Part shown: piece after piece, positions 997 through 52,712 of the stretch | Layout: each line of letters opens with the position of its first letter | Position numbering within the stretch: the stretch's first letter is position 1 | From: Anthoceros angustus | Taxonomy: Eukaryota > Plantae > Anthocerotophyta | Direction: 5' to 3' | Assembly: GCA_010909165.1 (NCBI GenBank) | Contig: MU008228.1 | Span: forward strand, 64,818-128,817 | Length of the DNA: 64,000 nt | Notes under the pieces: generated by a model | Told to the model about the DNA's origin: nothing | The model's input: only the letters and a program-made list of their open reading frames with translations | Database searches by the model: none | Program-made: the position numbers and the translations under genes

Positions 997-3346
997 TCAC
1001 GGTCGGCCTTCACAGCTGCAACAACCATTTGCAAATCGATGCACACGGTACCCATCCCTCACAACTATGTCTCTCTGTTCAAGCCTAGACATGATCTCCG
1101 TGGAACTGTGGCAGTCGCTGCACATGCGAAGATTCTTCGTTACCACGAGAGGTGTCCCACTTGGGGTGTTCAAGAGACCAAACGCCAGAGCTAGTTTCTC
1201 AGCATGCCCACAAAGCGCATCTTCCTTTTCCTTCTCACACACTGGCTTCAACACCAACTTTGTGTGAGGTACGGCCTCCTTCCTGCTTCAGACGTGCATT
1301 CGTGCTCTCTACCTTGCGCAATATCCTCTCCTTTCTCCCACCAGAAATCTATGTACCTCCTTATTCACCTCAATAGTCACCACTGCAGGTTTCTTGTTAG
1401 CTCCTGCTGCCATCCTCAGTGTTTCAATCCCATCTACATCAGCCCACCTACCTGCATCTGCGTAGGCATTGGCCATGAGCACATACGCAGACGCCTGCTG
1501 AGGGTCCAGTTTAACAATGCTTTCAAAACACCACTTCGCCCCCTCTATGTCCCCGTGACTCTTGCAGGCATTCAACAAAGACGTCAATCCCACAACATCA
1601 GTCTGGCCCTCGCATGATAACAACATGTTCTTTGCTTCATCTAAATGACCAGCACGCCCAAGAAGATCAATCATGCAGGTGTAATGCTCAACAGAAGGTT
1701 TGATGCCATGCTGTTCAGCCATGGAATCAAGGTGCTTGCGACCCTCGTGGACCAGTCCCTCATGACTGCATGCTACTAAAAGGCAAGTAAAAGTAGCATC
1801 ATTAGGCTGAATACCAGCAACTAACATCTCCTCAAAACAAGCTAGTGCCTTGTGACCTTCATCACAACCATACCCAATCAGGATTCCATGTCACCACATC
1901 CTTTGTGTTGCTGTCAAAACCTGGCGTGCATCTTCCAGTTCACATTTTGCATACATGTCCACCAGGCAGTTGCCCCCATACGTCATCCAGCAGTCCTCTC
2001 TCGACAATCTGTGAGTGCAGCTGCCTGCCCTTCTGTAAGGCACCAGTGCTTGCACATGCCTTCAGAAGGCAAGCAAAAGTAATGGTTAGCCAAAATGAGG
2101 CCTCCTGCTCCATTTGTCCATACAAACAAGCGCCTCATGTCCGAGCCTTGCTGCATACCCAGCTATCAGGGCATTCCATGTCACCACATTCTTTGTCCAT
2201 GCTGTCAAAACTGGCGTGCATCTTTCAGTTCACCACATTTTGCATACCCAGCAATCAGCATTCCATGTCACCACATCCTTTGTGGCCATGCTGTCAAAAC
2301 CTGGCGTGCATCTTTGCCACATTTTGCATACATGTCCACCAGGCAGTTGCCAACAAACAAGTTAGTAGCAATGCCACTGCACACATCACAGTGCACTTTT
2401 CTGCCAGATTCCAAGTCGCAGCAAATGCACAAGCTTGAAGGACAGCTACAAAGATGTGGGCATCCGCCTTCACTCCGGACCCAAGCATCTCGTGGTACAG
2501 TTGCACTGCCTCATTAGGTTTCCCATGTTTAGCATGGGCAGAGATGATGGAAGACCACGTGAAAACATCTGGTTTGTCTGCCCTGGTGAACACATCCATG
2601 GCCTCCTCTAGCCTGCCCCCACATGCATACATGCGCAAGATATGGTTCCCCACGTATGGAATCGACTCGTACCCAAGTTTGACACTGAGATTGTGAACTC
2701 GTCGCCCCACAACCAAATCCTTCTTGGCTGTACAGAGTTTTAGCACAGTGCAAAACATAGACAGAGAAATAGCAGAGTCTGTCTGCGCCAGGGATTCCAG
2801 GGATCCAACAGCCTCAGAAAGCCTCCCCTGCTGACATAACGTCCTCACGGTAACAGCCGTTACGACGCTCGTTTCCGATCCTGCACGCCTGCCAGCTTTA
2901 GGCTCATCCGGGGAGCTGGACTCGGAACGAGAGGCACGGTGGCCCATCTGTATATCCAAGGAAACCAGTTGCTCATCAACCCAAGCTGGTTTAAACATGT
3001 TGTTCAACCACAGGACCTCACCGGACCCTTTGCGCCGGAAGTCAGGCCAGTGCGAGCTCTTCTTCTCTCGTCTGTTGTCCCACCACAGGGTAGGGTCCAG
3101 AAAAAATTGTTGCCACAAGTGCTCCTGCTCCTGGCATCGACCATCGCTGGAAAGCCAGGCCCTACCCACACACTTTCTCGGAAGTAGAAGTGCTGGACTC
3201 CATACACTGCTGCACCTGGAGGCTTTGTTTGCCAGGGGTTGACACCCTAACATGTGGTGAGCGGGAGCTTCTGGTAGAATCCCCGTACACACATTAGTTG
3301 AAATTTGTTGGGTACACAGCGGGTCCGGTTGCCATACTGCTGCCAT
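997..3346 (-). CDS. PLS-class PPR protein with N-terminal PDF-like motif and C-terminal DYW:KP (GRP) domain (copy 2; frameshifted as assembled)
   Basis: ORFs 2294-3346 (leader, PDF motif, N-cap PPRs), 1309-1827 (L2-S2-E1-E2, KPAVV) and 997-1257 (HAEKLALAFG...NLRMCSDCH...CCSCEGRP). One central P-L-S triplet. Confidence 0.9.
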
Positions 3347-3871
3347 CGTTCAGGTACCACTGTTGGAAGATGAGTCTACCAACACAAACTATGCCAGGAT
3401 GCCCAGTTACTGCAGGATGCCCAGTTACTGTGCCTGACCACACCATACGAGCTGGCTCCGCTGCCGCAGCCTAAACCACATTAGTAAAGGTACCCGGAAT
3501 CGCTGGAGGTCCTCGCCTGATCAGCAAGGCCGCCTTCTTGATCCTGACTCTGAGGGTTTTGCATATTCTAAAGCGATTGAGCTGTTCTTCTCATTCTCTT
3601 GTGGCACACTTCGTAGTAATCTTTCTGTTCATGTTTTGTAAAAGAATTTGTGGACCACTGAATTGTGTAGACCAAGGAAGGGCGCGCAGGACTCCCTCGT
3701 GCGTGCGAGTTCATCAGTGCCACACATTATCAATAGACTCGACTTGATAGACTCGACTTGATAAGTACATATGTAGTTTGGTCCCTTCAGACTTGACCAC
3801 GTCAAGTCTGAAGGGCCTTTCACAATGCAAACGACACCGAGGCCGGGACTGCGCACTTGGTTTTGGACTTT

Positions 3872-5466: not shown

Positions 5467-5988
5467 GAAAAATGAAGTAGGTAGTACCGTAGTAGCCTGC
5501 GCTCATTGGGGGGTGAATATGTGCTTGCTTAACTCCATTCCTGTCCAACCTGAGACATGGATACGGATGGCAAACACTGATCCTGGAACCTCTCATCGTA
5601 ACACAGAGAATCAGAAGGTGCCACATGGGCATCGGGGAACCTGGCAGAGATGATGGGCATCGGTCGCTATGACCGTTCACAGTGCCCCGGCCGTCGCCTT
5701 TTTTTTTTTTTGTTAAATCAATCTTTTCTCTGTTGGGACAGGTGTATCACCACCTCCTTATTTGCCCGTCTCCAAGTGCCCCACCTCCGTCCTCCTCGTT
5801 GCCCCCGTTATGTCCTGACAGATTTTCACCAGCTTGCGAAGTCCGCACAGCGGCCAAGGAAACTACACAGTATGTTGCTTATTAGGCTGCGGCATTGGAG
5901 CCAGCTCGTATGCTGTGGTCAGGCACTGTACCTGGGTATCCTTGATAGTCTGTTGTTAGATTCACCTTCCGACGCCGGTCCCTGAACG

Positions 5989-8763
5989 ATGGCCACAGTA
6001 TGGCAACCGGACCCGTTCTGGACCCAACGAATTGGTGTCTGTGCAGGGAGTCTACCAGGAGCTCCCGCACACGTCATCTTAGGGAGTCAAAGTCTGGCAA
6101 CCAAAGACTCCAGGTGCTGCAGTGTAAGGAGCTCAGCACTTCCACTTCAGAGAAAGTGGATGGGTGGGGACGGGTTTTCCAGCGATGCCGGTCGTTGCCA
6201 GGAGCAGGAGCACTTGTGGCAACAATTTTTTCTGGAGCCTACCATGTGGTGTGACAACAGACGTCATAAGAAGAGCTCCCGTTCGCCTGACTTCCGGCGT
6301 AAGGGGTCTGGGGAGGTCCTGTGGTTAAACAACATGTTTAAGCCAGCTTGGGTTGATGAACAGCTCGTTTCCTTGGATTTGCAGATGGGTCATGGTGCCT
6401 CCTTCCAAGTCCAGCTTCCGGATACGCCTAAACCTGGGATGCGTGCAGGATCGGAAATGGGCGTCGTTACTGCTGTTACCGTGAGCACGTTATGTCAGCA
6501 GGGGAAGCTCTCTGAGGCCGTTGGAGCCCTGGAATCTTTGGCACAGAAAGCCTCTGCTGTCTCTCAGTCTCTGTTTTACACTGTGCTAAAACTGTGTACA
6601 GCTAAGAAGGATTTGGTTTTGGGGCGACGAGTACATGACCTCAGTGTCCAACTTGGGTACGAGTCGAATCCATACTTGGGGAACCATATCTTGCGCATGT
6701 ATGCATGTGGAGGTAGGCTAGAGGAGGCCATGGATGTGTTCAACAGGGTACGCAAACCGGATGCCTTCATGTGGTCTTCCATAATCTCCGCACACGCTAA
6801 GCATGGGAAACCTAATGAGGCCGTACAACTGTACCATGAGATGCGTAGGTCAGGAGTGAAGGCGGATGCTCACGTCTTTGTAGCTGCCCTTCAAGCTTGT
6901 GCATTTGCCGCCGACTTGGAATCTGGCAGAAAAGTGCACTGTGATGTGGTGCAGTGGCATTCCACTAACTTGTTTGTTGGCAACTGCCTGGTGGACATGT
7001 ATGCAAAATGTGGTGAACTGAAGATGCACGCCTGGTTTTTGACAGCATGCCACAAGGATGTGGTGACATGGACGGTGCTGATTGCTGGGTATGCAAAATG
7101 TGGCAACTGAAAGATGCACGCCAGGTGTTTTGACAGCATGAAGACAAAGATGTGGTGACATGGAATGCCCTGATAGCTGGGTATGCAAAATGTGGTGGAC
7201 TGAAAGATGCACGCCAGGTCTTTGACAGCATGAACACAAAGAATGTGGCCACATGGAATGCCCTTATAGCTGGGTATGCCCAGCACGGGCTCGGACATGA
7301 GGCACTTGTTCTGTATGGACAGATGGAGCAGGAGGGCTCTATTTTGGCTGACCATGTTACTTTTGCTTGCCTTCTGAAGGCCTGTGCAAGCACTGGCGCC
7401 TTACAGAAGGGCAGGCAGCTGCATTCACAGATCGTCGAAGAGGACTGCTGGATGACGTAGTGGTGGGCACCTGCCTGGTGGACATGTATGCAAAATGTGG
7501 TGAACTGGAAGATGCACGCCAGGTTTTTGACAGCATGGCCACAAAGGATGTGGTGACATGGAATGCCCTGATTGCTGGGTATGCACAGCAAGGACTCGGC
7601 CAAGAGGCGCTTGTTGTGTATGGACAAATGGAGGGGCGGGCCTCATTTTGGCTGACCATGTTACTTTTGCTTGCCTTCTGAAGGCCTGTGGAAGCACTGG
7701 TGCCTTACAGAAGGGCAGGCAGCTGCACTCACAGATTGTCGAAGAGGACTGCTGGATAACGTGGTGGGCAACTGCCTGGTGGACATGTATGCAAAATGTG
7801 GTGAACTGGGAGATGCCCGCCAGGTTTTTGACAGCATGGCCACAAAGGATGTGGTCACATGGACTGCTCTGATAGCGGGGTATGGTGCTTGTGATGAAGG
7901 TCACAAGGCACTAGCTTGTTTTGAGGAGATGTTAGTTGCCGGTATTCAGCCTGATGATGCTACTTTTACTTGCCTTTTAGTAGCATGCAGTCATGAGGAC
8001 TGGTCCACGAGGTCGCAAGCACTTTGATTCCATGGCTGAACAGCATGGCATCAAACCTACTATTGAGCATTTCACCTGTATGATTGATCTTCTTGGGCGT
8101 GCTGGCTATTTGGATGAAGCAGAGAAGATGCTGTTATCATGTGAGGGCCAAAGTAATGTTGTGGGCTTGACGTCTTTGTTGAATGCCTGCAGAAGGCACG
8201 GGGATATAGAGAGGGCGGTGTGGTGTTTTGAAAGCATTGTCAGGCTGGAGCCTCAAAGGGCTTCTGCTTATGTGCTGATGGCCAATGCCTACGCAGATGC
8301 AGGTAGGTGGACCGATGTAGACAGGATTGAAACACAGAGAAGAGCAGCAGGAGCAAGCAAGAAACCTGCAATGGCAAGCATTGAGGTGAATAAGGAAATA
8401 CACAGTTTTGTGGTGGGCGAAAGGAGGAAGGATATCGCGCATAAGGTAGAGAGCACAAATTCTCGTCTGAAGCAGGAAGGAGGCCACGTACCTCACACAA
8501 GGTTGGTGTTGAAGCCAGTGTGCGAGAAAGAAAAGGAAGATGCGCTTTGTGGGCATGCGGAGAAACTAGCTCTGGCGTTTGGTCTCTTGAACACTCCGAG
8601 TGGGACACCTCTGGTGGTAACAAAGAATCTACGCATGTGCAGTGACTGCCACAGTTCCACGGAGATCATGTCAAGGCTTGAACAGAGAGACATTGTTGTA
8701 AGGGATGGGTACCGTGTGCATCGATTCGCAGCTGGTTGTTGCAGCTGTAAGGGTCGACCGTGA
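5989..8763 (+). CDS. PDF-PLS-PPR-E1-E2-DYW:KP (GRP) protein (copy 4; frameshifts in the repeat array)
   Basis: ORF 5989-7110 has leader, PDF motif (6208-6366) and N-cap. SS motifs and two P-L-S triplets follow. ORF 7993-8763 has KPAMA, HAEKLA, CSDCH and CCSCKGRP. Confidence 0.92.
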
Positions 8764-14236: not shown

Positions 14237-16882
14237 CGTGCGCTGGTCGCTTTGTCGCCTCCCGTTACGTGCCTCCATCGCCGGGAGGAGAGTCCCTCCT
14301 CACAGCTGCCTTCCCCCAACTGCCATCACCTCGCTCAAGGGGGAGGGGACGTACCTCTTCAGAACACTTGTCATCTGAGGTGCGTCGCGGGAGGCACTGT
14401 TGGCAACGACTGGGGCTGCCTCTGTACTGCAAGCGTGTAGAACGGTAGACATGGATAGGAAAGGCGAGGGAGTGAGGGCATCCCCGCTGGTATGAAATGA
14501 ACGTAAGGACCGGAGGGGCCACCACATGGCCTCCCCACAGAGGGGCTCCAGGGATAGCGTCCTTCATGGTGCACCCGGTCTCTACCGCGGGCCGGCCTCA
14601 AGGCATGGGCACAAACATTCCCTGCAAATTCTCTCCTGACCTCACGTGAATGGCGGAGGGAAATTGTGGACACGCGTGTCGGAAGCACCTTCGTGTGGAA
14701 CCGCATTCCGCTTGAAGTGGTGGCAGCAGCTATCAAATCAACGAACCTTTGAAGAGCGAGGTCCGCGATGGCAAAATACACTGAAAGAAGGCAGCCTGTA
14801 TGGGTTGTCACTTAATAAGCTAGTGGACGACATGGAAAAGCGGCAAAACCGGGGTGAAGGCCGAGGGAAAATGGAAAAGCGGTCCATCAATTTAGGCACG
14901 GGGGAACACGATGCGCGCCGGCCAGCATGAACCGAGGGCCAAGTTGAAAAATGTTGGCAGAGATATCTGGGCGAGTGGTGGGAATATCCAAGGAGGAAAG
15001 CGTCAAAATTTGGTCAAGTGAACACTGTGGGAAGCGGGATCTGAAGAAACCTACAAATGTTAACCGTAAAGGCCTCCTAAATCAAGTCCTAACAAAACCC
15101 CTGCTCCACGGTGCATAAAGCACATGACCACCAGTCCTAACCCCCATGATCACTGTCCTCGATGATGTAGAGGTCGTTCATCTCCTCCCACAGGACATGG
15201 TTGGCGTGCGTCCAATTCGTGGAAGACGTTGAGATGAAATCCAGGAGGGGGCGATAGCGTCGAGGCCGTGCGGCACAGAGTCAAGCCGTCGTGGTGAAAC
15301 TTGGCCATCCAGCCTTGAAGTCCTCCGGTGACTCCGGGTGCTTGGACCGCGAGGCCTCGCGATGATCGTTAAGACCCAATGGCCACCCATCAAAATGAGA
15401 ATGCATGAAATAGTGCGCTTCCCGGAAGGCACTCTCATGATATGGCGTCCAGTCCGGTCAAATACACCGACCACGTTCCCTCATTTCGAAAAGAACTTCA
15501 AAGTCAAGGGTAGTTCTCTATGTGGCGGATGAGGTCGTTGTGGTCCTCCGCATCTGTGTAGCATCAAGCTCCTCGTCTGACGGAGGATGCATTGGCTTCT
15601 TGGGGTCATAAGACACAGAAACAACTCACTCCACATATTAGGATCGGGTGAGCTCGGAGGAGGCGTGGAACCCTCCTCCATTGCTGCCGGACATGCTTTG
15701 TGGGCTGCAGTGCAGGGCTGCGGCATGTGAGGAGAGGGTGGGCGCCCCGCCATCCCCACCACAATCGCGTATGCCTGCAACATTACGTGCATGGGCAGCA
15801 GGCAGCCGTATGGAAGTCAGACATTTGGAAGAGAAGGAGCATCAAACAATTGAGCATCACCATGGGCAGGAAGAAATGGGGACGACGTTAGTTGGTGCTT
15901 GGTGCTTGGTGCATGGATGGATAGGATCCATACTGTGGTGCCTCCTCGCCCGGCCTGCACGCCGCCTGGCGGCGCGACGCACTGCGCCCGGTTGCCCCAC
16001 CGCCTGGCACAAGGCCGCCTCACAGACATGGTCATGCCCCGCCCGCCCGCCCGCCCGCCCGCCCGCCTGCCCGCCCCGCCACGCCGCCGCCCGCCCGCCC
16101 CCGCTTCTTCCTTCCTTCACCGCCCGCCTGCCTCGCCGATACCCAGTTAGCCCGGCCCGCCCCTCACGATTGAAGGCCCACACGCCGCCTGCCTCGCCCT
16201 GCCCCGCCGCCTGCCCAAGGCTCACGCAAGCTCGCCGCCTGCCTGCGCCGGATCAGCCGCCGCTGGCCGGCGCGGCAGGCTACGTGGCTGGCGGTGCCGC
16301 CTGCAGCGCCGTGCCGCCGCCGCCGCCGCAGCGCCGCTGCGGTAAGCGTGCTCCCTGCCGCTGACACGCCTGCCTGCACTCGCCGCCGCCCGCCTGCCTC
16401 GCCCGCCCCGCTTGCTCGCCGCCGCCGGCCGCCCAAGGCTGCGGCGTGGCGTAGGCCCGCCAACAGGTTGCCCTAAACCCTGCCCTAAACCATCCCGCTC
16501 ACCCTCTTAGCACATGAACCCTAAAACGGGCAGGTGGTTTGCCTATGAGACCACCGGACCCTAAATCGAACGGCAGCTGGAAGAAAATTTTTTGTTCCGG
16601 GAGAAAACACATAGAGTGCGGGCAAAACCCTAAAGTGCCCTTCTGAAATCCGTGATCTGGGGTCACTGCGTCTCATACCCCATTTCGGTCGGGTTACCAA
16701 ACCGGACACCAAAAGTTATGCGGAAGAAAAAAAATGCCCGTCCCCTCTGTCCTCTTTGGTATGCCATACCTCCCTGTGCAAGTCGCTTGGACGTCTTGGG
16801 ATTTAAGTTAAACTTAAAAAAAAAAAAGATAAAGCAACCACACATTCACCCCCAATGAGCACTGGCTACTTCTTCATTGTTC

Positions 16883-19800
16883 TCACGGTCGACCCTTACA
16901 ACTGCAACAACCATGCGCAAATCGATGCACGCGGTACCCATCCCTCACAACAATGTTTCTCTGTTCAAGCCTTGACATGATCTCCGTGGAACTGTGGCAG
17001 TCACTGCACATGCGTAGATTCTTTGTGACCACCAGAGGTGTCCCACTCGGAGTGTTCAAGAGACCAAATGCCAGAGCTAGCTTCTCAGCATGCCCACAAA
17101 GCGCATCTTCCTTTTCCTTCTCAGACAGTGGCTTCAACACCAATTTTGTGTCAGGTACGTGGCCTCCTTCCTGCTTCAGCCGAGCATTCGTGCTCTCTAC
17201 CTTTAACGCAATATCCTCTCTCCTTTCTCCCACCAGAAATCTATGTACCTGCTTATTCACCTCAATGGTCGCCACTGCAGGTTTCTTGTTAGCTCCTGCT
17301 GCCTTCTCTGTGTTTCAATCCTGTCTACATCGGTCCACCTACCTGCATCTGCGTAGGCATTGGCCATAAGCACATAAGCAGACGCCTGCTGAGGGTCCAG
17401 TTTAACAATGCTTTCAAAACACCACATCGCCCTCTCTATATCCCCGTGACACTTGCAGGCATTCAACAAAGACGTCAATCCCACAACATCGGTCTGGCCC
17501 TCGCATGATAACAACATGTTCTCTGCCTCGTCCAAATGGCCAGCACGCCCAAGAAGATCAATCATGCAGGTGTAATGTTCAATAGTAGGTTTGATACCAT
17601 GCTGTTCAGCCATGGAATCAAGGTGCTTGCGACCCTCGAGGACCAGTCCCCCATGACTGCAGGCTACTAAAAGGCAAGTAAAAGTAGCATCATTAGGGTG
17701 AACACCGGCAACTAACATCTCCTCAAAACAAGCAAGTGCCTTGTGACCTTCATCACAAGTACCATACCCAGCGATCAGGGCATTCCATGTCACAACATCC
17801 TTTGTCCCCAAGCTGTCAAAAGCGTGGCGTGCATCTCCCAGTTCACCACATTTTGCATACATGTCCACCAGGCAGTTGCCAACACTGTTATCCAGCAGTC
17901 CTTTTCGACAATCTGTGAGTGCAGCTGCCTGCCCTTCTGTAAGGCACCAGTGCTTCCACAGGCCTTCAGAAGGCAAACAAAAGTAACATGGTCAGCCAAA
18001 ATCAGGCCCTCCTCCTCCATTTGTCCATACACAACAAGCGCCTCTTGGCCGAGTCCTTGCTGTGCATACCCAGCAATCAGGGCATTCCACGTCACCACAT
18101 CCTTTGTGTTCATGCTGTCAAAAACCTGGCGTGCATCTTCCAGTTCACCACATTTTGCATACATGTCCACCAGGTGCCCACACTACGTCATCCAGCAGTC
18201 CTCTTTCCACAATCTGTGAGTGCAGCTGCCTGCCCTTCTGTAAGGCACCAGTGCTTGCACAGGCCTTCAGAAGGCAAGTAACATGGTTAGCCAAAATGAG
18301 GCCCGCCTCCTCCATTTGTCCATACACAACAAGCCTCTTGGCGAGTCCTTGCTGTGCATACCCAGCAATCAGCATTCCATGTCACCACATCCTTTGTGGC
18401 ATGCTGTCAAAAACCTGGCGTGCATCTTCCAGTTCACCACATTTTGCATACATGTCCACCAGGCAGTTGCCCACCACAACGTCATCCAGCAGTCCTCTTC
18501 GACAATCTGAGTGCAGCTGCCTGCCCTTCTGTAAGGCACCAGTGCTTGCACAGGCCTTCAGAAGGCAAGCAAAAGTAACATGGTCAGCCAAAATGAGGCC
18601 TCCTCCATTTGTCCATACACAACAAGCGCCTCTCCGAGTCCTTGCTGTGCATACCCAGCAATCAGGGCATGTCCATGTCACCACATCCTTTGTGGCCATG
18701 CTGTCAAAAATCTGGCGTGCATCTTCCAGTTCACCACATTTGGCATACATGTCCACCAGGCAGTTGCCCACCACAATGTCCAGCAGTCCTCTTCGACAAT
18801 CTGTGAGTGCAGTTGCTGCCTGCCCTTCTGTAAGGCACCAGTGCTTGCACAGGCCTTCAGAAGGCAAGCAAAAGTAACATGGTCAGCCAAAATCAGGCCT
18901 GCCTCCATTTGTCCATACACAACAAGCGCCTCTTCGCCGAGTCCTTGCTGTGCATACCCAGCAATCAGCACTGTCCATGTCACCACATCCTTTGTGGCCA
19001 TGCTGTCAAAAATCTGGCGTGCATCATTCAGTTCACCACATTTGGCATACATGTCAACCAGGCAGTTGCCCACCACAATGTTATCCAGCAGTCCTCGCTC
19101 GACAATCTGTGAGTGCAGTTGAATGCCCTTCTGTAAGGCACCAGTGCTTGCACAGGCCTTCAGAAGGCAAGCAAAAGTAACATGATCAGCCAAAATCAGG
19201 CCCGCCTCCTCCATTTGTCCATACACAAGCGCCTCGAGTCCTTGCTGTGCATACCCAGCAATCAGCATTCCATGTCACCACATCCTTTGTGGCCATGCTG
19301 TCAAAAACCTGGCGTGCATCTTCCAGTTCACCACATTTTGCATACATGTCCACCAGGCAGTTGCCCACACTACGTCATCCAGCAGTCCTCTTTCGACAAT
19401 CTGAGTGCAGTTGCTGCCCTTCTGTAAGGCACCAGTTCTTGCACAGGCCTTCAGAAGGCAAGTAAAAGTAACATGGTTAGCCAGAATGAGCCCCTCCTGC
19501 TCCATTTGTCCATACACAAAAGCGCCTCATGTCCCCTGCTGCATACCCAGCAATCAGGGCATTCCATGTCACCACATCCTTTGTGGCCATGCTGTCAAAA
19601 ACCTGGCGTGCATCTTTCAGTTGGCCACATTTTGCATACATGTCCACCAGGCAGTTGCCCACCACAACGTCATCCAGCAGTCCTTTTTCGACAATCTGTG
19701 AGTGCAGTTGCATGCCCTTCTGTAAGGCACCAGTGCTTGCGCAGGCCTTCAGAAGGCAAGAAAAAGTGACATGGTTAGCCAAAATGAGGCCTGCCTCCTC

Positions 19801-21221
19801 CATTAGTCCATACACAACAAGCGCCTCTTGGCCGAGTCCTTGCTGTGCATACCCAGCCATCAGGGCATTCCATGTCACCACATCCTTTGTGGCCATGCTG
19901 TCAAAAACCTGGCGTGCATCTTCCATTTTGCCACATTTTGCATACATGTCCACCAGGCAGTTGCCAACAAACAAGTTAGCAGCAATGCCACTGTGCACCA
20001 CATCACAGTGCACTGCTCTGCCAGATTCCAAGTCGGCGGCAAATGCACAAGCTTGAAGGGCAGCTACAAAGACGTGAGCATCTGCCTTCACTCCTGACCT
20101 ACGCATCTTGTGGTACAGTCGTATGGCCTCCTTAGGCTTCCCATGCTTTGCGTATGCTGAGATTATGGAAGACCACATGAAAGCATCTGGTTTCCCGACC
20201 CTGGTGAACACATCCATGGCCTCCTGCAGCCTCCCTCCACATGCATACATGCGCAGGATATGGTTCCCCAAGTATGCATTCGAATCGCACCCAAGTTTTA
20301 CTGTGAGATGATGGACTCGTCGCCCCACAACCAAATCCCTCTTAGCTGTACACAGTTTCAGCACGGTGTAGAAGAGAGTGTGAGAGATGGCGGAGTCTGC
20401 CTGCGCCAGGGATTCTAGAGCTCCAACGGCCTCAGAAAGCTTCCCCTGCTGACAGAACATGGTCACGATTTCTGACGCCTCCCAATCCTGCACGCCTGCC
20501 AGGTTCAGGCTTATCCGAGAGCTGGACTCGGAAGGAGAGGCACCATGACCCATCTGCATATCCAAGGAAACGAGCTGCTCATCAACCCAAGCTACAGCTT
20601 GTGTTGTTTAACCACAGGACCTCGCCGGACCCTTACGCCGGAAGTCAGGCGAACGGGAGCTCTTCTTATCTCGTCTGTTGTCCCACCACATGGTAGGTCC
20701 AGAAAAATTGTTGCCACAAGTGCTCCTGCTCCTGGCGACGACCATCGCTGCTGGAAAAGCCGTCCCACCACATTTTCTCGGAAGGAGGCACCATGACCCA
20801 TGTGCACATCCAAGGAAACGAGCTGTTTATCAACCCAAGCTGGCTTAAACATGTTGTTTAACCACAGGACCTCGCCGGATCCCTTACGCCGGAAGTCGGG
20901 CGAACGGGAGCTCTTCTGATCTCGTCTGTTGTCCCACCACATGGTAGGCTCCAGAAAAAATTGTTGCCACAAGTGCTCCTGTTCCTGTTCCTGTTCCTGG
21001 CGACGACCATCGCTGCTGGAAAAGCCGTCCCGACCCACACATTTTCTCGGAAGGAGAAGTGCTGGGCTCCGAGTCCCTACACTGTTGCACCTGCAGGCTT
21101 TGTTTGCCAGGGGTTGACTCCCTAGGATGAGGTGAGCGGGAGCTTCTGGTAGAACACCTGTACACACACCAAGTGCAATTTGTTGGGTCCACAACGAGTC
21201 CGGTTGCCATACTGTGGCCAT
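16883..21221 (-). CDS. PDF-PLS-PPR-DYW:KP (GRP) protein with seven central triplets and a duplicated PDF region (copy 5; frameshifted)
   Basis: ATG at 21221 (MATVWQPDS). PDF motifs at ~20820-20980 and ~20572-20727. Seven GALQKG L-motifs about 300 nt apart between ~17940 and ~19720. ORF 16883-17275 has HAEKLA...CSDCH...CCSCKGRP. Confidence 0.9.
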
Positions 21222-26901: not shown

Positions 26902-28417
26902 TCACGGACGACCTTTACAACTGCAACAACCAGCTGCGAATCGATGCACACGGTACTTCTTCGTTACCATCAGAGGTGTCCCACTCGGAGTGTTCAACAG
27001 ACCAAACGCCAGAGCTAGTTTCTCAGCATGCCCACAAAGCGCATCTTCCTTTTCCTTCCGAGACAGGGGCTTCAACACCAATTTTCTGTGAGGTACGTGG
27101 CCTCCTTCCTGTTTCACAAGAGAATTGGTGACCTCTACCTTCAGTGCAATATCCTCTCTCCTTTCTCCCACCAGGAACCTATGGACCTCCTTATTCACCT
27201 CAATGGTCGCCACTGCAGGTTTCTTGTTAGCTCCTGCTACCATCCGCTGTGTTTCAATCCTCCACCTACCTGCATAGGCATTGGGCGCCTCCTGGGGGTT
27301 CAGCCTAACAATGCTTTCAAAACACCACATCGCCCTCTCTATATCCCCGTGACTTTTGCAGGCTCTCAACAAAGACGTCAATCCTACAACATCATTTTGC
27401 CCAAAAATGATAATAGAATCGTCTCTGCCTCATCCAAAAAGCCCGCACACCCAAGAAGATCAATCATGCAGGTGTAATGCTCAACAGGAGGTTTGATGCC
27501 ATGCTCTTCAGCCATGGAATCAAAGCGCTTGCGCCCCTCATCCACCAGTCCCTCATGACTGCATGCTACTAAAAGGCAAGAAAAACTAGCCCCATCAGGC
27601 TGGATGCCGGCAACTAAACATCTCCTCAAAACAAGCTAGTGCCTTGAGACCTTCATCACAAGTACCATACCCACCAATCAGGGCTGTCCATGTCACCACA
27701 TCCTTTCTGTTCATGCTGTCAAAAACCTGCCGTGCATCTTCCAGTTCACCACATTTTGAATACATGTCCACCAGGCAGGTGCCCACCACTGCGTCATCCA
27801 GCAGTCCTCTTTCAACGATCTGTGAGTGCAACTGCCAGCCCTTCTGTAAGGCGCCAGTGCTTGCACAGGCCTTCAGAAGGCACGCAAAAGTAAAATGGTT
27901 AGCGAAAATGAGGCCCTCGCGCTCCATTTGTCCTTACACAACAAGTGCCTCTTGGCCGGTTCCTTGGTGTACATACCCAGCAATCAGAGCATTCCATGTC
28001 ACCACATCCTTTTTGGCCATGCTTTCAAAAACCTGGCGTGCATCTTCCAGTTCACCAGATTTTGCATACATGTCCACCAGGCAGGTGCCCACCACTACGT
28101 CATCCAGGAGTCCTCTTTCGATAATCTGTGAGTGGAGTTGCGTGCCCTTCTGTAAGGCACCAGTGCTTGCACAGGCCTTCAGAAGGCAAGCAAAAGTTGC
28201 ATGGTTAGCCACAATCAGGCCCGCCTCCTCCATTTGTCCATACACAACAAGGGCCTCTTGGCCAAGTCCTTGCTGCGCATACCCAGCAAGCAGGGCATTC
28301 CATGTCACCACATGGGTGCACTCCCTGAGGTGAGGTGGGCCGGAGTTCCTCCTAGGATCCCTGAACACGCTCCAATTTGTTGGGTCCACAGGGGTCCGGT
28401 TGCCATACTGCGGCCAT
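26902..28417 (-). pseudogene. PPR-DYW:KP copy 6 lacking the PDF motif, N-cap and CxxC
   Basis: Leader (ATG 28417) is fused near 28310 directly to VVTWNALL. Two triplets. The DYW domain reads PLMVTK-KYRVHRF...GRP, so NLRMCxDCH is deleted. Confidence 0.85.
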
Positions 28418-29052
28418 CGTTCAGGAACCGTCGTCGGAAGATGACTTTAAGTGGCGGGATCTCCGGGTACTGTGTATGACCACACCACCCTGAAGGAGTG
28501 AGCACACTGTTTTGCATTGCTCACCTACAAACAAACAGCACAAGACATGTTATTATAGCAGCGCTATGGCGTACCGTTTTGGGCAGGGGGCTTACTTTCT
28601 TTCTTTTTGGCGGAGCTGGCCGTCCACCGAGTTGGATCCCCAGCTTGGTACACGGAGCCAGATGGAGCTCCAGCTAGGCCCAGTAACCACCAAAGGCTGG
28701 GCACAGGCTCGATCCTCGATCGGGCCAGCCCGCGATCGCAGCCAGGCCGTGCCGTGGGTGCATGCCAGCAGCCAGGCCGAGATTAGGCACCATGCCCACC
28801 CGTGATTAGGCTAGATTCGATCATTGAGGCCGAGAGCGAATCCATTCAGGCTTTTTAATTCCATTCCGGCGCCTGATCGACTCAGGCCTCCATCATTCAG
28901 GCTTGATGACAGGCCCCCCATGACCTTCAGAGGTCGGGCCAGGCCTGAATCGCCTCAGGCTTGGCTGAATCGATAGATTCACCCCACAGGAAAAACCAAC
29001 GGTCTCCGGCGTACAAACTTGGGCACCGACTACTTTCTTCATATTATTACTT

Positions 29053-32000
29053 TCACGGTCGACCTTTACAACTGCAACAACCAGCTGCGAATCGATGTAC
29101 ACGATAACCATCCCTTACAACAATGTTTCTCTTCTCAATCCTTGACATGATCTCCGTGGAACTGTGACAGTCGCTGCACATGCGTAGATTCTTCGTTACC
29201 ACCAGAGGTGTCCCACTCGGAGTGTTCAACAGACCATACGCCAGAGCTAGTTTCTCAGCATGCCCACAAAGCACATCTTCCTTTTCCTTCTCAGACAGTG
29301 GCTTCAACACCAACTTTGTGTGAGGTACGTGGCCTCCTTCCTGCTTCAGACGTGCATTCGTGCTCTCTACCTTTAACGCAATATCATCTCTTCTTTCTCC
29401 CACTGCAAATGTATGTACCTGCTTCTTCACCTCAACGGTCGCCACAGCAGGTTTCTTGCTAGCTCCTGCTGCCATTCTCTGTGTTTCAATCCTGTCTGCA
29501 TCGCTCCACCTACCTGCATCTGCATAGGCATGGGCCATAAGCACGTACGCAGACGCCCTTTGAGGATCCAGCCTAACAAGGCTTTCAAAACACAACATTG
29601 CCCTCTCTATATCCCCATGACTTTTGCAGGCATTAAGCAAAGACATCCACCCCACGACATCACTTTGACTTTCGAATGATAATAGCATCTTCTCAGCCTC
29701 ATCTAAATGGCCCGCACGCCCAAGAAGATCAATCATGCAGGTGTAATGCTCAACAGTAGGTTTGATGCCATGCTCTTCAGCCATGGAATCAAAGTGCTTG
29801 ACCCTCGTCCAGTCCTCATGACTGCATGCTACTAGAAGGCAAGTAAAAGTAGCACCATCAGGCTGAATACCGGCAACTAACATCTCCTCAAAACAAGCTA
29901 GTGCCTTGTGACCTTCATCACAAGTACCATACCCAGATATCAGGGCGGCATTCCATGTCACCACATCTTTGTGTTCATGCTGTCAAAACCTGGCGTGCAT
30001 CTTCCAGTTCACCACATTTTGCATACATGTCCACCAGGCAGGTGCCCACCACTACCTCATCCAGCAGTCCTCTTTCCACAATCTGTGAGTGCAGCTGCCT
30101 GCCCTTCTGTAAGGCACCAGTGCTTGCACAGGCCTTCAGAAGGCAAGCAAAAATAACATGGTCAAAATGAGGCCTTCTTGCTCCATTTGTCCATACAACA
30201 AGCCTCTTGGCTCCTGCTGCCATTCTCTGTGTTTCAATCCTGTCTACATCGCTCCACCTACCTGCATCTGCATAGGCATGGCCATGAGCACATACGCAGA
30301 CGCCCTGAGGTCCAGCCTAACAATGCTTTCAAAACACCACATCTCTCTATATCCCCGTGACTTTTGCAGGCATTCAACAAAGACATCACCCCACACATCA
30401 CTTTGGCCTCATGATAATAGCATCTTCAGCCTCATCTAAATGGCCTGCACGCCCAAGAAGATCAATCATGCAGGTGTAATGCTCAAGTAGGTTTGATGCC
30501 ATGCTGTTCAGCCATGGAATCAAAGTGCTTGCCCTCGTCCACCAGTCCTCATGACTGCATGCTACTAGAAGGCAAGTAAAAGTAGCATCAGGCTGAATAC
30601 CGGCAACTAACATCTCCTCAAAACAAGCTAGTGCCTTGTGACCTTCATCACAAGCACCATACCCAGATATCAGGGCTGTCCATGTCACCACATCCTTTGT
30701 GCCATGCTGTCAAAACCTGGCGTGCATCTTCCAGTTCACCACATTTTGCATACATGTCCACCAGGCAGTTGCCCACCACTACGTTATCCAGCAGTCCTCT
30801 TTCAACAATCTGTGAGTGCAGCTGCCTGCCCTTCTGTAAGGCACCAGTGCACAGGCCTTCAGAAGGCAAGCAAAAGTAACATGGTCAGCCAAAATGAGGC
30901 CTCTTGCTCCATTTGTCCATACAACAAGCGCCTCTTGGCCCCTTGCTGTGCATACCCAGCAATCAGGGCATTCCATGTCACCACATCCTTTATGGCCAAG
31001 CTGTCGAAAACCTGGCGTGCGTCTTCCAGTTCACCACATTTTGCATACATGTCCACCAGGCAGTTGCCCAACACGACATTTTCCAGCAGTCCTCTTTTGA
31101 CAATCTCTGAGTGCAGCTGCCTGCCCTTCTCTATGGCACCAGTGCTTGCACAGGCATTGAGAAGGCAAGCAAAAGTAACATGGTTAGCCAAAGTGAGGCC
31201 CTCCTGCTCCATTTGTCCATGCAGAACAAGCGCCTCATGTCCAAGCCCTTGCTGGGCATACCCAGCAATCATTGCTGTCCATGTCACCACATTCTTTGTG
31301 ATCATGCTGTCAAAAATCTGGTGCGCATCGTTCAGTTCACCACATTTTGCATACCCAGCTATCAGGGCATTCCATGTCACCACATCCTTTGTGGCCATGT
31401 TGTCAAAAACCTGGCGTGCATCTTTCATTTGGCCACATTTTGCATACATGTCCACCAGGCAGTTGCCAACAAACAAGTCATTAGAATGCCACTGCACATC
31501 ATAGTGCACTTTTCTGCCAGATTCCAAGTCAGGCAATGCACAAGCTGAAGGGCAGCTACAAAGACGTGAGCATCCGCCTTCACTCCTGACCTACGCATCT
31601 CATGGTACAGTTGTATGGCCTCCTTAGGTTTCCATGCTTAGCATGCGCAGATTATGGAAAACCACATGAAGACGTTGGTTTGCCCACCCTGGTGAACACA
31701 TCCATGGCCTCCTGCAGCCTACCTCCACATGCATACATGCGCAAGATATGGTTCCCCAAGTATGCATTCGACTCGTACCCAAGTTTGACAGTGAGATCAT
31801 GAACTCGTCGCCCCACAACCAAATCCTTCTTAGCTGTACACAGTTTTAGCACAGTGTACAAGAGAGACTGAAATAGCAGAGTCTGTCTGCGCCAGAGATT
31901 CCAGGGCTCCAACGGCCTCAGAAAGCTTCCCTGCTGACATAACGTGCTCACGGTTCCAGCCGTTACGACGCCCATTTCCGATCCTGCACACTCCAGGTTC

Positions 32001-32403
32001 AGGCTTATCCGGAGAGCTGGACTCGAAGAGAGGCACCATGACCCATCTGCATATCCAAGGAAACGAGCTGTTCATCAACCCAAGCTGGCTTAAACATGTT
32101 GTTCAACCACAGCACCTCGCCGGACCCCTTACGCCGGAAGTCAGGCGAACGGAGCTCTTCTTATCTCGTCTGTTGTCCACCACATGGTAGGGTCCAGAAA
32201 AATTGTTGCCACAAGTGCTCCTGCTCCTGGCAACGACCATCGCTGGAAAACCGTCCCACCACATTTCTCGGGTGCTACACTGCTGCACCTGAGGCTTGGT
32301 GTTTGCCAGGGGACTCCTGAGGTGAGGTGAGCCGAGTTCCTCTAGGATCCCTGTACACACCAATTTGTTGGGTCCACAACGGTCCGGTTGCCATGCTGGC
32401 CAT
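29053..32403 (-). CDS. PDF-PLS-PPR-DYW:KP (GRP) copy 7 with internal duplication of the P2-L2-S2-E region (frameshifted)
   Basis: ATG at 32403, PDF at ~32065-32220. A first P2-L2-S2-E block at 30210-30690 is followed by a further L-S unit. ORF 29053-29964 has KPAVA, HAEKLALAYG, CSDCH and CCSCKGRP. Confidence 0.85.
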
Positions 32404-32783
32404 CGTTCAGGACCGTCGTCGGAAGATGACTAACAAAGACATGGCGGGTCCCCTACTGTGTGACCACACCACCCTGAAGGAGTGAGCAGACTGTTTTGCA
32501 TTGCGTACCTACAAAAAAGAAGACACGTAATGGTTGCGAAGGATGCGAAGTCGTGCTTCCTTTCGCGGTGTAGTAACTACTATCTAGCTGTCTACAACTT
32601 CCTCATTCCAGAAAGAGACGATTCACTGGACTCTGATTGTGTCCGTTATGATGGGAGGCGGATCAGCGTTAGCCATCCATGTGCATCCAGCGCAGGCACA
32701 GTCACCGTGTGACCCCACAGGAGAAAGCGGTGTTCTCCGGCGTACAGACTTGGGCACCGACTACTTTCTTCATATTGTTATTT

Positions 32784-35410
32784 TCACGCTCGACCTTTAC
32801 AACTGCAACAACCAGCTGCGAATCGATGCACACGATACCCATCCCTTACAACAATGTCCCTCTTTTCAAGCCTTGACATGATCTCCGTGGAACTGTGACA
32901 GTCACTGCACATGCGTAGATTCTTCGTTACCACCAGAGGTGTCCCACTCGGAGTGTTCAACAGACCAAACGCCAGAGCTAGCTTCTCAGCATGCCCACAA
33001 AGCACATCTTCCTTTTCCTTCTCAGACAGTGGCTTCAACACCAACTTTGTGTGAGGTACGTGGCCTCCTTCCTGCTTCAGACGTGCATTCGTGCTCTCTA
33101 CCTTTAACGCAATATCATCTCTCTTTCTCCCACCAAATGTATGTACCTGCTTCTTCACCTCAATGGTCGCCACTGCAGGTTTCTTGTTAGCTCCTGCCAT
33201 TCTCTGTGTTTCAATCCTGTCTACATCGGTCCACCTACCTGCATCTGCATAGGCATTGGCCATGAGCACATACGCAGACGCCCTGAGGTCCAGCCTAACA
33301 ATGCTTTCAAAACACCACATCGCCCTCTCTATATCCCCATGACTTTTGCAGGCATTCAACAAAGACGTCAACCCCAACATTACTTTGGCCTCATGATAAT
33401 AGCATCTTCTCAGCCTCCTCTAAACGGCCCGCACGGCCAAGAAGATCAATCATACAATTGTGATGCTCATTAGTAGGTTTGATGCCATGCTGTTTCGCCA
33501 TGCAATCAAAGTACTTGCGACCCTCGTCCACCAGTCCCTCATGACTGCATGCTACTAGAAGGCAAGTAAAAGTAGCACCATCAGGCTGAATACCGGCAAC
33601 TAACATCTCCTCAAAACAAGCTAGTGCCTTGTGACCTTCATCACAAGTACCATACCCAGATATAAGGGCATTCCAAGTCACCACATCCTTTGTGTTCATG
33701 CTATCAAAAGCCTGGCGTGCATCTTCCAGTTCACCACATTTTGCATACATGTCCACCAGGCAGGTGCCCACCACTACGTTATCCAGGAGTCCTCTTTCAA
33801 CAATCTGTGAATGCAGCTGCCTGCCCTTCTGTAAGGCACCAGTGGTTGCACAGGCTTTCAGAAGGCAAGCAAATATAACACGGTCAGCCAAAATGAGGCC
33901 CACTTCTTCCATTTGTCCATACAGCACAAGCGCCTCTTGGCCAGTCCTTGCTGCATACCCAGCAATCAGGGCCGTCCATGTCACCACATCCTTTGTGGCC
34001 ATGCTGTCAAAAACCTGGCGTGCATCTTCCAGTTCACCACATTTTGCATACATGTCCACCAGGCAGTTGCCCACCACAACGTTATCCAACAGTCCTCTTT
34101 CGACAATCAGTGAGTGCAGTTGCCTGCCCTTCTGTAAGGCACCAGTGCTTGCACAGGCCTTCAGAAGGCAAGCAAAAGTAACATGGTCAGCCAAAATCAG
34201 GCCCTCCTCCATTTGTCCATACACAACAAGCGCCTCTTGGCCGAGTCCTTGCTGCATACCCAGCAATCAGGGCATTCCATGTCACCACATCCTTTGTGGC
34301 CATGCTGTCAAAAACCTGGCGTGCATCTTTCAGTTCACATTTTGCATACATGTCCACCAGGCAGGTGCCAACAAACAAGTCAGGAGGAATGCCACTGAGC
34401 AACACATCACTGTGCACTTTTCTGCCAGATTCCAAGTCGGCAGCAAATGCACAAGCTTGAAGGGCAGCTACAAACACATGAGCATCTGCCTTCACTCCTG
34501 ACCTACGCATCTCATGGTACAGTTGTACGGCCTCATTAGGTTTCCCATGTTTAGCATGGGCAGAGATGATGGAAGACCACATGAAAACATCTGGTTTGCC
34601 TACCCTGGTGAACACATCCATGGCCTCCTCTAGCCTACCTCCACATGCATACATGCGCAAGATATGGTTCCCCAAGTATGCATTCGACTCGTACCCAAGT
34701 TTAACAGTGAGATCATGAACTCGTCGCCCCAAAACCAAATCCTTGCTAGCTGTACACAGTTTCAGCACAGTGCAAAACAAAGACAGCGGAATAGCAGAGC
34801 CTGTCTGCGCCAGAGATTCCAGGGCTCCAACGGCCTCTGAAACCCTCCTCTGCTGACAAAACATGCTCACGGTTCCAGGCGTTACGACGCCCATTTCCGA
34901 TCCTGCACGCCTGCCAGGTTCAGACTTATCTGGAGAGCTGGACTTGGAAGGAGAGGCACCGTGAGCCATGTGCGTATCCAAGGAGACGAGCTTCTCATCA
35001 ACCCAAGCTGGCTTGAACATGCTGTTTAACCACAGGACCTCCCCGGACCCCTTGCGCCGGAAGTCAGGCGAACGGGAACGGGAGCTCTGCTTATCTCGTC
35101 TGTTGTCCCACCACATGGCAGGCTCCAGAAAGAATTGTTCCCACAAGTGCTCCTGCCCCTGCTCCTGCTCCTGCTCCTGGCAACGACCGGCATAGCTGGG
35201 AAAGGGAAATCTGTCCCCACTCACCCATTTTCTCGGAAGTGGAAGTGCTGGGCTCCTTACACTGCTGCACCTCCAGGCTTCATTGTTTGCCACGAGTTGA
35301 CTCCCTAAGATGAGGTGACCGGGACCCGGAGTTCCTCCTAGGATCCCTGTGTATGTACACGAGCCAATTTGTTGGGTCCACAACGGGTCCGGTTGCCATA
35401 GTGCGGCCAT
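32784..35410 (-). CDS. PDF-PLS-PPR-DYW:KP protein ending GRA (copy 8; few frameshifts)
   Basis: ORF 34187-35410 (leader, PDF, N-cap), 33391-34266 (two triplets, P2-L2-S2) and 32784-33380 (E, KPAVA, HAEKLA, CSDCH, CCSCKGRA). Confidence 0.92.
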
Positions 35411-36077
35411 CGTTCAGGGACCGCTGTCGGGAGATGATTGTGGCAGGGTCCCCGGGTACTGTGGATGACCACGCCACCTTGAAGGGGCGGGTAGTCTGTT
35501 TTGCATTCCTTACCTCCCAGAACTAAAACAAACAAACGTTATGGTTTCCAAGTTTGGGACGGAAACGGGGGGCATGTGCATGTGAAGTCATACGTATGCA
35601 TATGCTTCATGTCGGTTGCCCAGGTACCGCGTACGGCCTGGCAATGTCATACTCCTGGCATGGCCTTCCTCTCCCTCGCCCTCGCCCCCATTCTCTTTCT
35701 TCTCTTTGGGTACGACGCCGCGACCGGCAAGCGCAAGCGAGGGCGCTGGGAAACTATTTCAAAGTTCTCGCTTGCCCTAGACGGAAATGGAGGCTTTAGG
35801 TAAGAAAAAAACTGAGAAATCCCATGTACCCCTAGACCATCTCCCAGGCCAAAGGGAGACTATAGAGGAACAAACCAGGCAAAAAGTTCATTAGCCTCGC
35901 GATCGCTCATCTTGAAATTATCTACGACTCCAAAAATGTATGATCCGGGATATGACTCGGCCTACCTATCATTGATATAAAAGGGCCTACCTACCACTAG
36001 TGTCGAAGATGCAGCGATAACTAATTGGTGCGACGACGTTCATCATGTTCTTGCTTGCAAGTGCACGGAGGGAATGC

Positions 36078-52707: not shown

Positions 52708-52712
52708 GATTG

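What the first reader, a model, noticed from the sequence alone, without database searches (positions are those of the whole stretch)
17740..19990. TALE/VLR-like architecture: constant caps around a variable array of near-identical 306-nt P-L-S triplets that toggle at code residues
Seen: each intact gene has the same N-cap PPRs and P2-L2-S2-E1-E2 C-cap, but 1, 2, 7, 2, 2(+1) and 2 central triplets (36+35+31 aa). The triplets are nearly identical at DNA level, and recurring differences include position 5 (W-N/T-AL, VG-N/T-CL) and the last residue (LA-D/N, LD-D/N, K-D/N), each a one-base change. Established: these two positions determine base recognition (T+N=A, T+D=G, N+D=U, N+N=C/U). Inference: unequal crossover and gene conversion between homogenised modules form a combinatorial generator of RNA specificities, and a ready-made scaffold for designer U-to-C editors.
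Basis: partly seen in the sequence, partly recalled or inferred. Interest (0 to 1): 0.8.

Follow-up and report, generated by a model that had tools for sequence, protein, structure and literature searches.

The report
Hornwort PPR editing genes, repeated triplets
This is a cluster of hornwort-type genes for organelle RNA-editing (PPR-DYW:KP) proteins whose RNA-reading part grew by tandem copying of a 306-base three-repeat block; the pattern is real, but it is an ordinary young gene family rather than a special diversity generator, and every copy has a broken reading frame in this assembly.

Summary
The array exists as described. At 17763-19965 on the minus strand there are about 7.4 copies of a ~302-306-nt unit, and the six paralogues carry 1, 2, 7, 2, 2(+1) and 2 full P(36)-L(35)-S(31) triplets. 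The genes are GRP-type PPR-DYW:KP factors, a known hornwort subgroup.

Three parts of the description fail:
- No gene is intact. The triplets carry 56 small indels, 53 of them deletions.
- The triplets are 84-98% identical (mean 92%), no more alike than the "constant" caps (87-95%).
- S-last is invariant, and the P5 N/T change needs two bases.

Code residues are enriched for change: they rank 5, 12, 13, 14 and 17 of 102 (p=0.004), and their dN/dS is 0.83 against 0.32 elsewhere. They still hold only about 15% of the amino-acid diversity, and only four code pairs occur. A recombination test was negative.

Most frameshifts are probably long-read consensus errors, but the reads tools could not settle this.

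Best reading: a young tandem family that expanded by in-register unequal recombination, with relaxed constraint at code residues. The closest evolutionary analogue is the Rf-like PPR clusters. Designer U-to-C editors built from GRP proteins are already published. First-reader notes report the same kind of array in at least eight other stretches of this genome.

The parts
16883..21221 (-). Gene C, a GRP-type PLS PPR-DYW:KP gene. It has an N-terminal region with a duplicated PDF-type motif, cap PPRs, 7 triplets, P2-L2-S2-E1-E2 and a DYW:KP domain. The reading frame is interrupted many times.
   Evidence: ORF pieces and three-frame map; Pfam PPR, E_motif and DYW_deaminase
17797..19881 (-). Array of 7 P-L-S triplets. 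Units lie at about 19576-19881, 19282-19575, 18988-19281, 18685-18987, 18390-18684, 18099-18389 and 17797-18098. The array is 2085 nt instead of the expected 2142, with 27 deletions and 2 insertions relative to an in-frame unit.
19882..20170 (-). Divergent cap P-L-S block directly upstream of the array in gene C
   Evidence: (weak nhmmer hit, E 1.9e-23)
17285..17796 (-). P2-L2-S2-E1-E2 C-cap of gene C, with one frameshift near 17301
   Evidence: contigs with an extra base at 17301
16886..17284 (-). DYW:KP deaminase domain of gene C: 133 aa, with KP, HAE, CSDC, Lys88 and a C-terminal GRP
1000..3349 (-). Gene A, a paralogue with 1 triplet (1899-2187, 12 indel events) and 89-nt S-type repeats at 2152-2315
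5986..8763 (+). Gene B, a paralogue with 2 triplets (7245-7850) preceded by 92-nt S-type motif repeats at 6999-7279
26902..28446 (-). Gene D, a truncated paralogue. The 5' end is fused directly to 2 triplets (27700-28311, no indels, one in-frame stop), and the DYW domain lacks the CxxC segment.
29053..32429 (-). Gene E/E2, a paralogue with 2 triplets (30692-31290). An internal partial duplication joins the end of the C-cap (E2 motif) into the P motif of a partial triplet (29967-30211), which is followed by a second complete C-cap and DYW:KP domain.
32784..35413 (-). Gene F, a paralogue with 2 triplets (33685-34288). It is the least broken copy (three ORF pieces) and ends in GRA.

Best explanation
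The window holds a young tandem cluster of six hornwort-type PLS-class PPR genes of the GRP subgroup of DYW:KP proteins, the candidate organellar U-to-C RNA editing factors. Each gene follows the standard plan N-terminus - cap PPRs - (P-L-S)n - P2-L2-S2-E1-E2 - DYW. The central RNA-binding tract was lengthened or shortened by in-register duplication or deletion of a whole 306-nt P-L-S triplet, and of 93-nt S-type motifs. The most likely cause is unequal homologous recombination between repeats within and between the tandem paralogues. This happened at about the same time as the gene duplications themselves. Since then the helical scaffold has been under purifying selection, while the base-specifying residues (position 5 and the last residue) have changed at roughly the neutral rate. 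This is the expected behaviour of any PPR tract whose targets drift. It is germline birth-and-death evolution, as in Rf-like PPR clusters, not a dedicated diversity-generating device. The many frameshifts are most likely uncorrected long-read consensus errors in repeats, layered on a few real structural defects (genes D and E/E2). Shown: the architecture, the copy numbers, the family membership, the distribution of variability, and the indel statistics. Inferred: the recombination mechanism, the artefactual nature of the indels, and function as U-to-C editors.
For: Architecture and counts. Family: Pfam PPR, E_motif and DYW_deaminase; a 133-aa domain with KP, HAE, CSDC, Lys88 and GRP, matching published DYW:KP/GRP descriptions (PMC9478123, PMC11845758). 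Timing: units are 84-98% identical (mean 92%) against 87-95% for the caps between genes. The unit tree is star-like with weak positional groups: A1/B1/E1/C2, the last units B2+C7, and the neighbours C3+C4. Recombination footprints: S-type hybrid motifs, the E/E2 chimera and the D fusion. Selection: dN/dS is 0.37 overall, 0.32 outside code codons and 0.83 at the six code codons. Code positions rank 5, 12, 13, 14 and 17 of 102, MWU p=0.004. Indels as artefact: 53 deletions against 3 insertions. They fall on columns where units differ, 26/53 against 12.4 expected, p<0.001. There are none in 351-408 codons of the N-caps of A, B, C and F, but 29 in the 2.1-kb array C. The three most divergent units (D1, D2, E1) have none. 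Unrelated transposon duplicates in the same window have as many or more gap openings than mismatches: 17 vs 5, 14 vs 6, 43 vs 36. Published Anthoceros assemblies are R9 Nanopore + racon + Pilon (PMC8075897). At 18669, 18794, 19366, 19519 and 17301 public contigs carry the frame-restoring length. Analogue: rice RFL clusters evolve by unequal crossing-over that duplicates motifs or whole genes (PMC5075784). Intact lycophyte proteins P0001 and P0006 have the same N-terminal motif and 5-7 mutually similar triplets.
Against: The reads test was inconclusive. Only ~70-nt contigs of a very large family were laid, and 29445 of 48240 pieces fitted two places, so contigs with the 'repaired' length may come from paralogues. 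No run held more than 0.42 of the stretch's words. Only 26 of 56 indels sit in homopolymer or slippage contexts, which is about chance. Some defects are certainly structural and not base-call errors (gene D, E/E2). GRP proteins are reported as under-represented in transcriptomes (PMC9478123), which would also fit many dead copies. The PHI test gives no positive evidence of recombination inside units. No close relatives were found in the protein databases (best identity 56%), so copy-number variation in intact genes could not be shown.
Confidence: 0.62

Rival explanations
1. A subtelomere-like graveyard of real pseudogenes. The frameshifts are genuine mutations, and the cluster is decaying debris of the amplified GRP family with no present function.
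For: No gene has an open frame. Gene D is truncated with a stop in unit D2 and no CxxC, gene E/E2 is chimeric, and gene F ends in GRA. The surroundings are rich in transposons, with telomere-type repeats. The GRP subgroup is under-represented in transcriptomes (PMC9478123). Earlier scan notes report both broken and intact GRP clusters in this same assembly, so the assembly can give intact copies.
Against: dN/dS of 0.37 between units shows the divergence arose under constraint. Indels are absent from more than 1 kb of N-cap but dense in the array, which contradicts uniform decay. The 53:3 deletion bias and the location of indels on inter-unit variable columns point the other way. So does the same excess of gaps over mismatches in transposon duplicates.
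Confidence: 0.22
2. One reading: a TALE/VLR-like combinatorial generator. Modules are kept homogeneous by gene conversion, and selection toggles the code residues to create new RNA specificities.
For: Variable cassette number. Code residues are enriched for change, and P-last and L-last are the most evenly split columns. 36% of informative site pairs violate the four-gamete rule. First-reader notes record similar arrays in at least 8 other stretches of the genome (unchecked).
Against: Units are no more alike than the caps. Units do not cluster by array. PHI is not significant. dN/dS at code codons is below 1. About 85% of amino-acid diversity is outside the code positions. Only four code pairs are used. 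There is no incomplete germline gene with donor cassettes as in VLR.
Confidence: 0.1
3. The 7-unit length of array C is itself an assembly artefact, an expansion or collapse of a repeat.
For: The assembly is visibly noisy in repeats. Contig joints that skip whole units occur, though they probably come from paralogues.
Against: The units differ by 3-9% and each is distinct, so a 2.1-kb array is easily spanned by long reads. Similar arrays are noted elsewhere in the genome, and 5-7 near-regular central triplets occur in each of two intact lycophyte proteins.
Confidence: 0.06

Closest known systems
GRP subgroup of hornwort PPR-DYW:KP proteins (Gerke et al. 2020 and Gutmann et al. 2020, as cited in PMC9478123)
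   Same: (P1-L1-S1)n-P2-L2-S2-E1-E2-DYW plan; a DYW domain of 133 aa with KP in place of PG; HAE; CxxC; Lys88; C-terminal GRP.
   Different: Nothing defining differs. This locus adds a tandem cluster with 1-7 very similar triplets and reading frames that are broken in this assembly.
Restorer-of-fertility-like (RFL) P-class PPR clusters of angiosperms (PMC5075784)
   Same: Tandem clusters of highly similar PPR genes. Unequal crossing-over duplicates or deletes motifs and whole genes. Substitution is elevated at the base-specifying residues. Pseudogenes are frequent.
   Different: RFL proteins are P-class with 35-aa single-motif units and no deaminase. Here the unit is a 102-aa P-L-S triplet in PLS-class editing factors. 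Diversifying selection (dN/dS above 1) is not shown here.
TAL effector repeat arrays
   Same: Tandem near-identical modules, one module (here one motif) per nucleotide, specificity set by two residues, and array length that varies by recombination.
   Different: TALE repeats are usually more than 95% identical with almost all variation at the RVD. Here units are 84-98% identical and about 85% of amino-acid variation lies outside the code positions. The target is RNA, not DNA. There is no homology.
Synthetic PLS-DYW:KP editors KP2/KP3 (PMC9478123, PMC11845758)
   Same: Consensus P-L-S triplets with reprogrammed code residues, fused to a GRP-type C-terminal domain; they show U-to-C activity in E. 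coli and human cells.
   Different: Those are designed proteins with three triplets. The natural genes here have 1-7 triplets and an extra N-terminal PDF-type motif.
Lycophyte PLS proteins with PDF-type N-terminus (Diphasiastrum complanatum KAJ7517631.1 and KAJ7568880.1)
   Same: The same N-terminal motif, cap PPRs and a run of 5-7 mutually similar P-L-S triplets.
   Different: Their triplets are 62-82% identical at protein level and so older. Code positions are not significantly more variable than the rest (p=0.13). The models shown end in E motifs.

Membership tests
PLS-class PPR RNA-editing factor | Tandem P, L and S motifs of about 35/35-36/31 aa | tested here: met
   The 102-aa unit is 36+35+31 aa; Pfam PPR, PPR_1, PPR_2 and PPR_3 hits
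PLS-class PPR RNA-editing factor | C-terminal P2-L2-S2-E1-E2 extension | tested here: met
   Pfam E_motif in the C-cap pieces of genes B and C
PLS-class PPR RNA-editing factor | Uninterrupted coding sequence and expression | tested here: not met
   All six genes are frameshifted in this assembly. The only expression hint is an exact-match contig over the 3' flank at 16676-16895, in a run that is only guessed to be RNA.
DYW:KP (GRP subgroup) | DYW deaminase fold with an HxE...CxxC zinc site | tested here: met
   PF14432 at E 2.5e-34 and 5.6e-33. HAE and CSDC are present in A, B, C, E2 and F; CxxC is missing in D.
DYW:KP (GRP subgroup) | KP instead of PG at the domain start; Ala after the catalytic His; conserved Lys88; last three residues GRP | tested here: met
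   KKPA..., HAE, K at residue 88 of the 133-aa domain, and a GRP end (gene F: GRA). Criteria taken from PMC9478123 and PMC11845758.
DYW:KP (GRP subgroup) | U-to-C editing activity on an organellar target | not testable with these tools
   Activity has been shown only for consensus designer proteins KP2 and KP3 (PMC9478123)
TALE-like repeat array | Variation between repeats essentially confined to the specificity residues | tested here: not met
   48 of 102 columns vary. The six code positions hold about 15% of the entropy. The top-ranked columns include the non-code positions L21, P29, P30 and P18.
VLR-like assembly system | An incomplete germline gene completed by copy-choice from flanking cassettes | tested here: not met
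   Five of the six genes (all but D) carry their own caps and array in the germline sequence, and no cassette banks are present
RFL-type birth-and-death PPR cluster (works-like comparison) | A tandem cluster of similar genes that differ in motif number and include chimeric or truncated members | tested here: met
   Six paralogues within 35 kb; 1-7 triplets; the chimeric E/E2 and the truncated D
RFL-type birth-and-death PPR cluster (works-like comparison) | Diversifying selection (dN/dS above 1) at code residues | tested here: inconclusive
   dN/dS is 0.83 at six codons against 0.32 elsewhere, from 16 units only

The most novel reading that the evidence does not exclude
In hornworts the GRP-type U-to-C editing factors evolve as 'accordion' genes. 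Whole P-L-S triplets are gained and lost by in-register unequal recombination across hundreds of paralogues, and the code residues are free to flip. The family would thus continually throw up new RNA specificities that track the thousands of organellar U-to-C sites. This would be a PLS-class, triplet-unit counterpart of Rf-like PPR or NLR birth-and-death evolution, and I did not find it described in the searched literature.
Probability: 0.3. Interest if true: 0.5.

Novelty: new member of a known kind. Interest (0 to 1): 0.3.

Why it matters
If open reading frames are confirmed with accurate reads, these genes would be natural examples of U-to-C editors with very regular, easily decoded RNA-binding tracts. 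That would help in matching factors to editing sites in hornworts, and in dating how quickly PLS tracts expand. The practical message is a caution. In this assembly the repeat-rich PPR clusters carry about 1-3% deletion-type indels, so gene models, pseudogene calls and repeat-level evolutionary statistics from it are unsafe without accurate reads. The engineering idea is not new, because GRP-based designer U-to-C editors already exist.

Tried and rejected
1. Reads check. 
2. Close relatives. phmmer over the 50%-identity representatives and the word-indexed search gave no close family member (best identity 56%). Full-length GRP proteins are longer than the search window allowed for my longest open piece. 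The frameshifted genes were never joined or read through; the pieces were searched apart.
3. Exact look-up of the gene F N-terminal ORF in public assemblies: not on record.
4. PHI-type recombination test on the 16 units: not significant.
5. Unit tree: almost unresolved, with no starred branches, so parsimony counts of toggles were not attempted.
6. Gerke et al. 2020 is not held in the paper library. I did not try to fetch Gutmann et al. 2020. I therefore cannot say whether they already describe triplet arrays.
7. I considered whether D/N toggles are CpG artefacts. By my own reading of the codon contexts, the changed G is preceded by T in both contexts, so this was rejected.
Full report
**What is there.** Tandem Repeats Finder reports an array at 17763-19965 with period 302, 7.4 copies, 89% matches and 5% indels.

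I took one in-frame 306-nt unit from the intact upstream ORF (19576-19881, minus strand) and searched the window with nhmmer.

Each unit translates to P (36 aa), L (35 aa) and S (31 aa) motifs. Pfam finds PPR motifs, the E motif and a DYW deaminase domain in the open pieces.

The DYW domain is 133 aa long. It starts with KP, has HAE and CSDC, has Lys at residue 88 and ends in GRP. These are the published marks of the hornwort GRP subgroup of DYW:KP proteins, the candidate U-to-C editors (PMC9478123, PMC11845758). A plant-type telomere repeat and this hornwort-specific subgroup point to a hornwort.

**What is not as described.**
- No gene is intact. All six are split over several frames.
- Against an in-frame reference, array C is 2085 nt instead of 2142, with 27 deletions and 2 insertions.
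- The 16 triplets together carry 56 events: 53 deletions and 3 insertions, 45 of them frame-breaking.
- Gene D lacks its N-cap, has an in-frame stop in its second triplet and has lost the CxxC segment. Gene E carries an internal partial duplication that joins the end of the C-cap (the E2 motif) into the middle of a P motif. Gene F ends in GRA.
- "Nearly identical" is generous. Gap-free identity between units is 84-98%, mean 92%.
- The "constant" caps are just as diverged between paralogues, at 87-95%. The triplets are therefore not specially homogenised.
- The best unit pairs lie between genes (B2, C5, E2 and F1 at 98%). The unit tree is nearly a star with weak positional groups.

**Do the differences sit at code residues?** Partly.
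- Of 102 codon columns, 54 are invariant.
- By entropy, L5, L-last, P-last, S5 and P5 rank 5, 12, 13, 14 and 17. S-last never varies in full triplets. A rank test of the six code positions against the rest gives p=0.004.
- P-last and L-last are the most evenly split columns (7:9).
- Nei-Gojobori estimates give dN/dS of 0.37 overall, 0.32 outside the code codons and 0.83 at them. dN is 0.186 against 0.049.
- The code residues thus evolve near the neutral rate on a constrained scaffold, but not demonstrably faster than neutral.
- They hold only about 15% of the amino-acid entropy. The most variable columns include non-code positions (L21, P29, P30, P18).
- P5 Asn/Thr differs by two bases, not one.
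- Only N or T at position 5 and D or N at the last position occur. The predicted targets are therefore pyrimidine-rich and of low information content.

**Recombination.** There are structural footprints of unequal or illegitimate exchange:
- 89-93-nt S-type hybrid motifs that begin like P and end like S, in genes A, B and E
- the E/E2 chimera
- the gene D fusion

Among 40 informative sites, 36% of pairs are incompatible. Incompatibility does not fall with proximity (PHI-type test, p about 0.8), so there is no positive evidence for conversion tracts within units.

**Are the frameshifts real?** The reads tools could not decide this. No run held more than 0.42 of the stretch's words. What was laid were tens of thousands of ~70-nt contigs from a very large family, most fitting several places. 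At 18669, 18794, 19366, 19519 and 17301 some contigs carry the frame-restoring length, but they may come from paralogues.

Indirect evidence favours consensus errors:
- The deletion to insertion ratio is 53:3.
- Deletions fall on columns where units differ from each other, 26 of 53 against 12.4 expected (p<0.001). This is what a consensus built from misplaced reads would produce.
- The N-caps of genes A, B, C and F run for 351-408 codons without a break, while the 2.1-kb array C has 29 events.
- The three most divergent units, which are the easiest to polish, have none.
- Unrelated transposon duplicates in the same window have as many or more gap openings than mismatches: 17 vs 5, 14 vs 6 and 43 vs 36. 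This is the reverse of normal divergence.
- dN/dS of 0.37 shows that the unit divergence arose under constraint.
- The published Anthoceros assemblies were made from R9 Nanopore reads with racon and Pilon polishing (PMC8075897). This fits the pattern, although I cannot say that this window comes from one of them.

Evidence the other way:
- Only 26 of 56 events are in slippage-type contexts.
- GRP proteins are reported as under-represented in transcriptomes (PMC9478123).
- Earlier notes of this scan report both broken and intact GRP clusters in the same assembly (unchecked).

I put about 0.75 on most of the small indels being artefacts. Genes D and E/E2 are defective in any case.

**Comparison with what is known.** The genes meet every sequence criterion I could test for the GRP subgroup of DYW:KP proteins. 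The plan (P1L1S1)n-P2L2S2-E1E2-DYW is the textbook one (PMC9478123).

The closest evolutionary analogue is the Rf-like PPR clusters. There, unequal crossing-over duplicates single motifs or whole genes, and the code residues show high substitution rates (PMC5075784).

Intact proteins of the lycophyte Diphasiastrum complanatum (P0001 and P0006) share the N-terminal motif and carry 5-7 mutually similar triplets. Those triplets are 62-82% identical at protein level, and their code positions do not stand out (p=0.13). Runs of related triplets are therefore a general feature of PLS expansions in seedless plants, and the present arrays are simply younger.

The TALE comparison holds only loosely, and the VLR comparison does not hold at all. 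The proposed application exists already: designer U-to-C editors KP2 and KP3 were built from hornwort GRP sequences and work at 22-26% efficiency in E. coli (PMC9478123).

**Verdict.** This is a real and tidy example of cassette-wise expansion in a known gene family. Constraint is relaxed at the specificity residues. The locus sits in an assembly region whose base-level accuracy is poor.

First-reader notes list the same kind of array in at least eight other stretches of this genome (unchecked), so it is a family-wide trait rather than a property of this locus. I found no paper in the searched library that describes the triplet arrays of GRP genes explicitly. I could not read one of the two key papers (Gerke 2020) and did not try to fetch the other (Gutmann 2020).

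Noticed in passing
window 62150-63376 and 63377-64000: About 175 copies of the plant telomere heptamer (82% matches, 4% indels) are followed by 620 nt of unrelated AT-rich sequence. The array is therefore interstitial, or it marks a mis-join rather than a chromosome end.
   Followed up: partly
window 39322-40361, 49195-51079, 51726-55013: Transposon-derived duplicates differ by as many or more gap openings than mismatches (17 vs 5, 14 vs 6, 43 vs 36). This is a signature of uncorrected long-read indel errors in repeats of this assembly.
   Followed up: partly
window 20592-21221 (-): Gene C appears to carry two copies of the N-terminal PDF-type motif segment (WWDNRR...PDFRRKG); the second is readable only in a shifted frame.
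   Followed up: no
window 21775-23757: Directly upstream of gene C there is a (GCTATG)n microsatellite of about 137 copies. It is followed by a 42-nt minisatellite with 13.9 copies, and again by 4 copies at 23588-23757.
   Followed up: no
window 6999-7279, 2152-2315, 31256-31447: 89-93-nt repeats encode 31-aa S-type hybrid motifs that start like a P motif and end like an S motif. They lie between the cap and the first triplet in genes B, A and E, so the tract also varies in single-motif steps. These motifs carry the only K-N last residues.
   Followed up: partly
window 16676-16895: One public run (coded X4, guessed to be RNA) has a 258-nt contig that matches the 3' flank of gene C without any difference. 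The three other runs have no depth over 16600-16740. X4 may be from the same strain, and the 3' end may be transcribed.
   Followed up: no
window 38215-39576 (-) and 42741-44531 (+): Two copia-type gag/pre-integrase ORFs (453 and 596 aa) lie between the PPR cluster and the telomere-type repeat.
   Followed up: no
P0001, P0006 (Diphasiastrum complanatum KAJ7517631.1, KAJ7568880.1): Lycophyte PLS proteins share the N-terminal WWDNR...PDF motif and carry 5-7 mutually similar P-L-S triplets. This architecture therefore predates the hornwort GRP family.
   Followed up: partly
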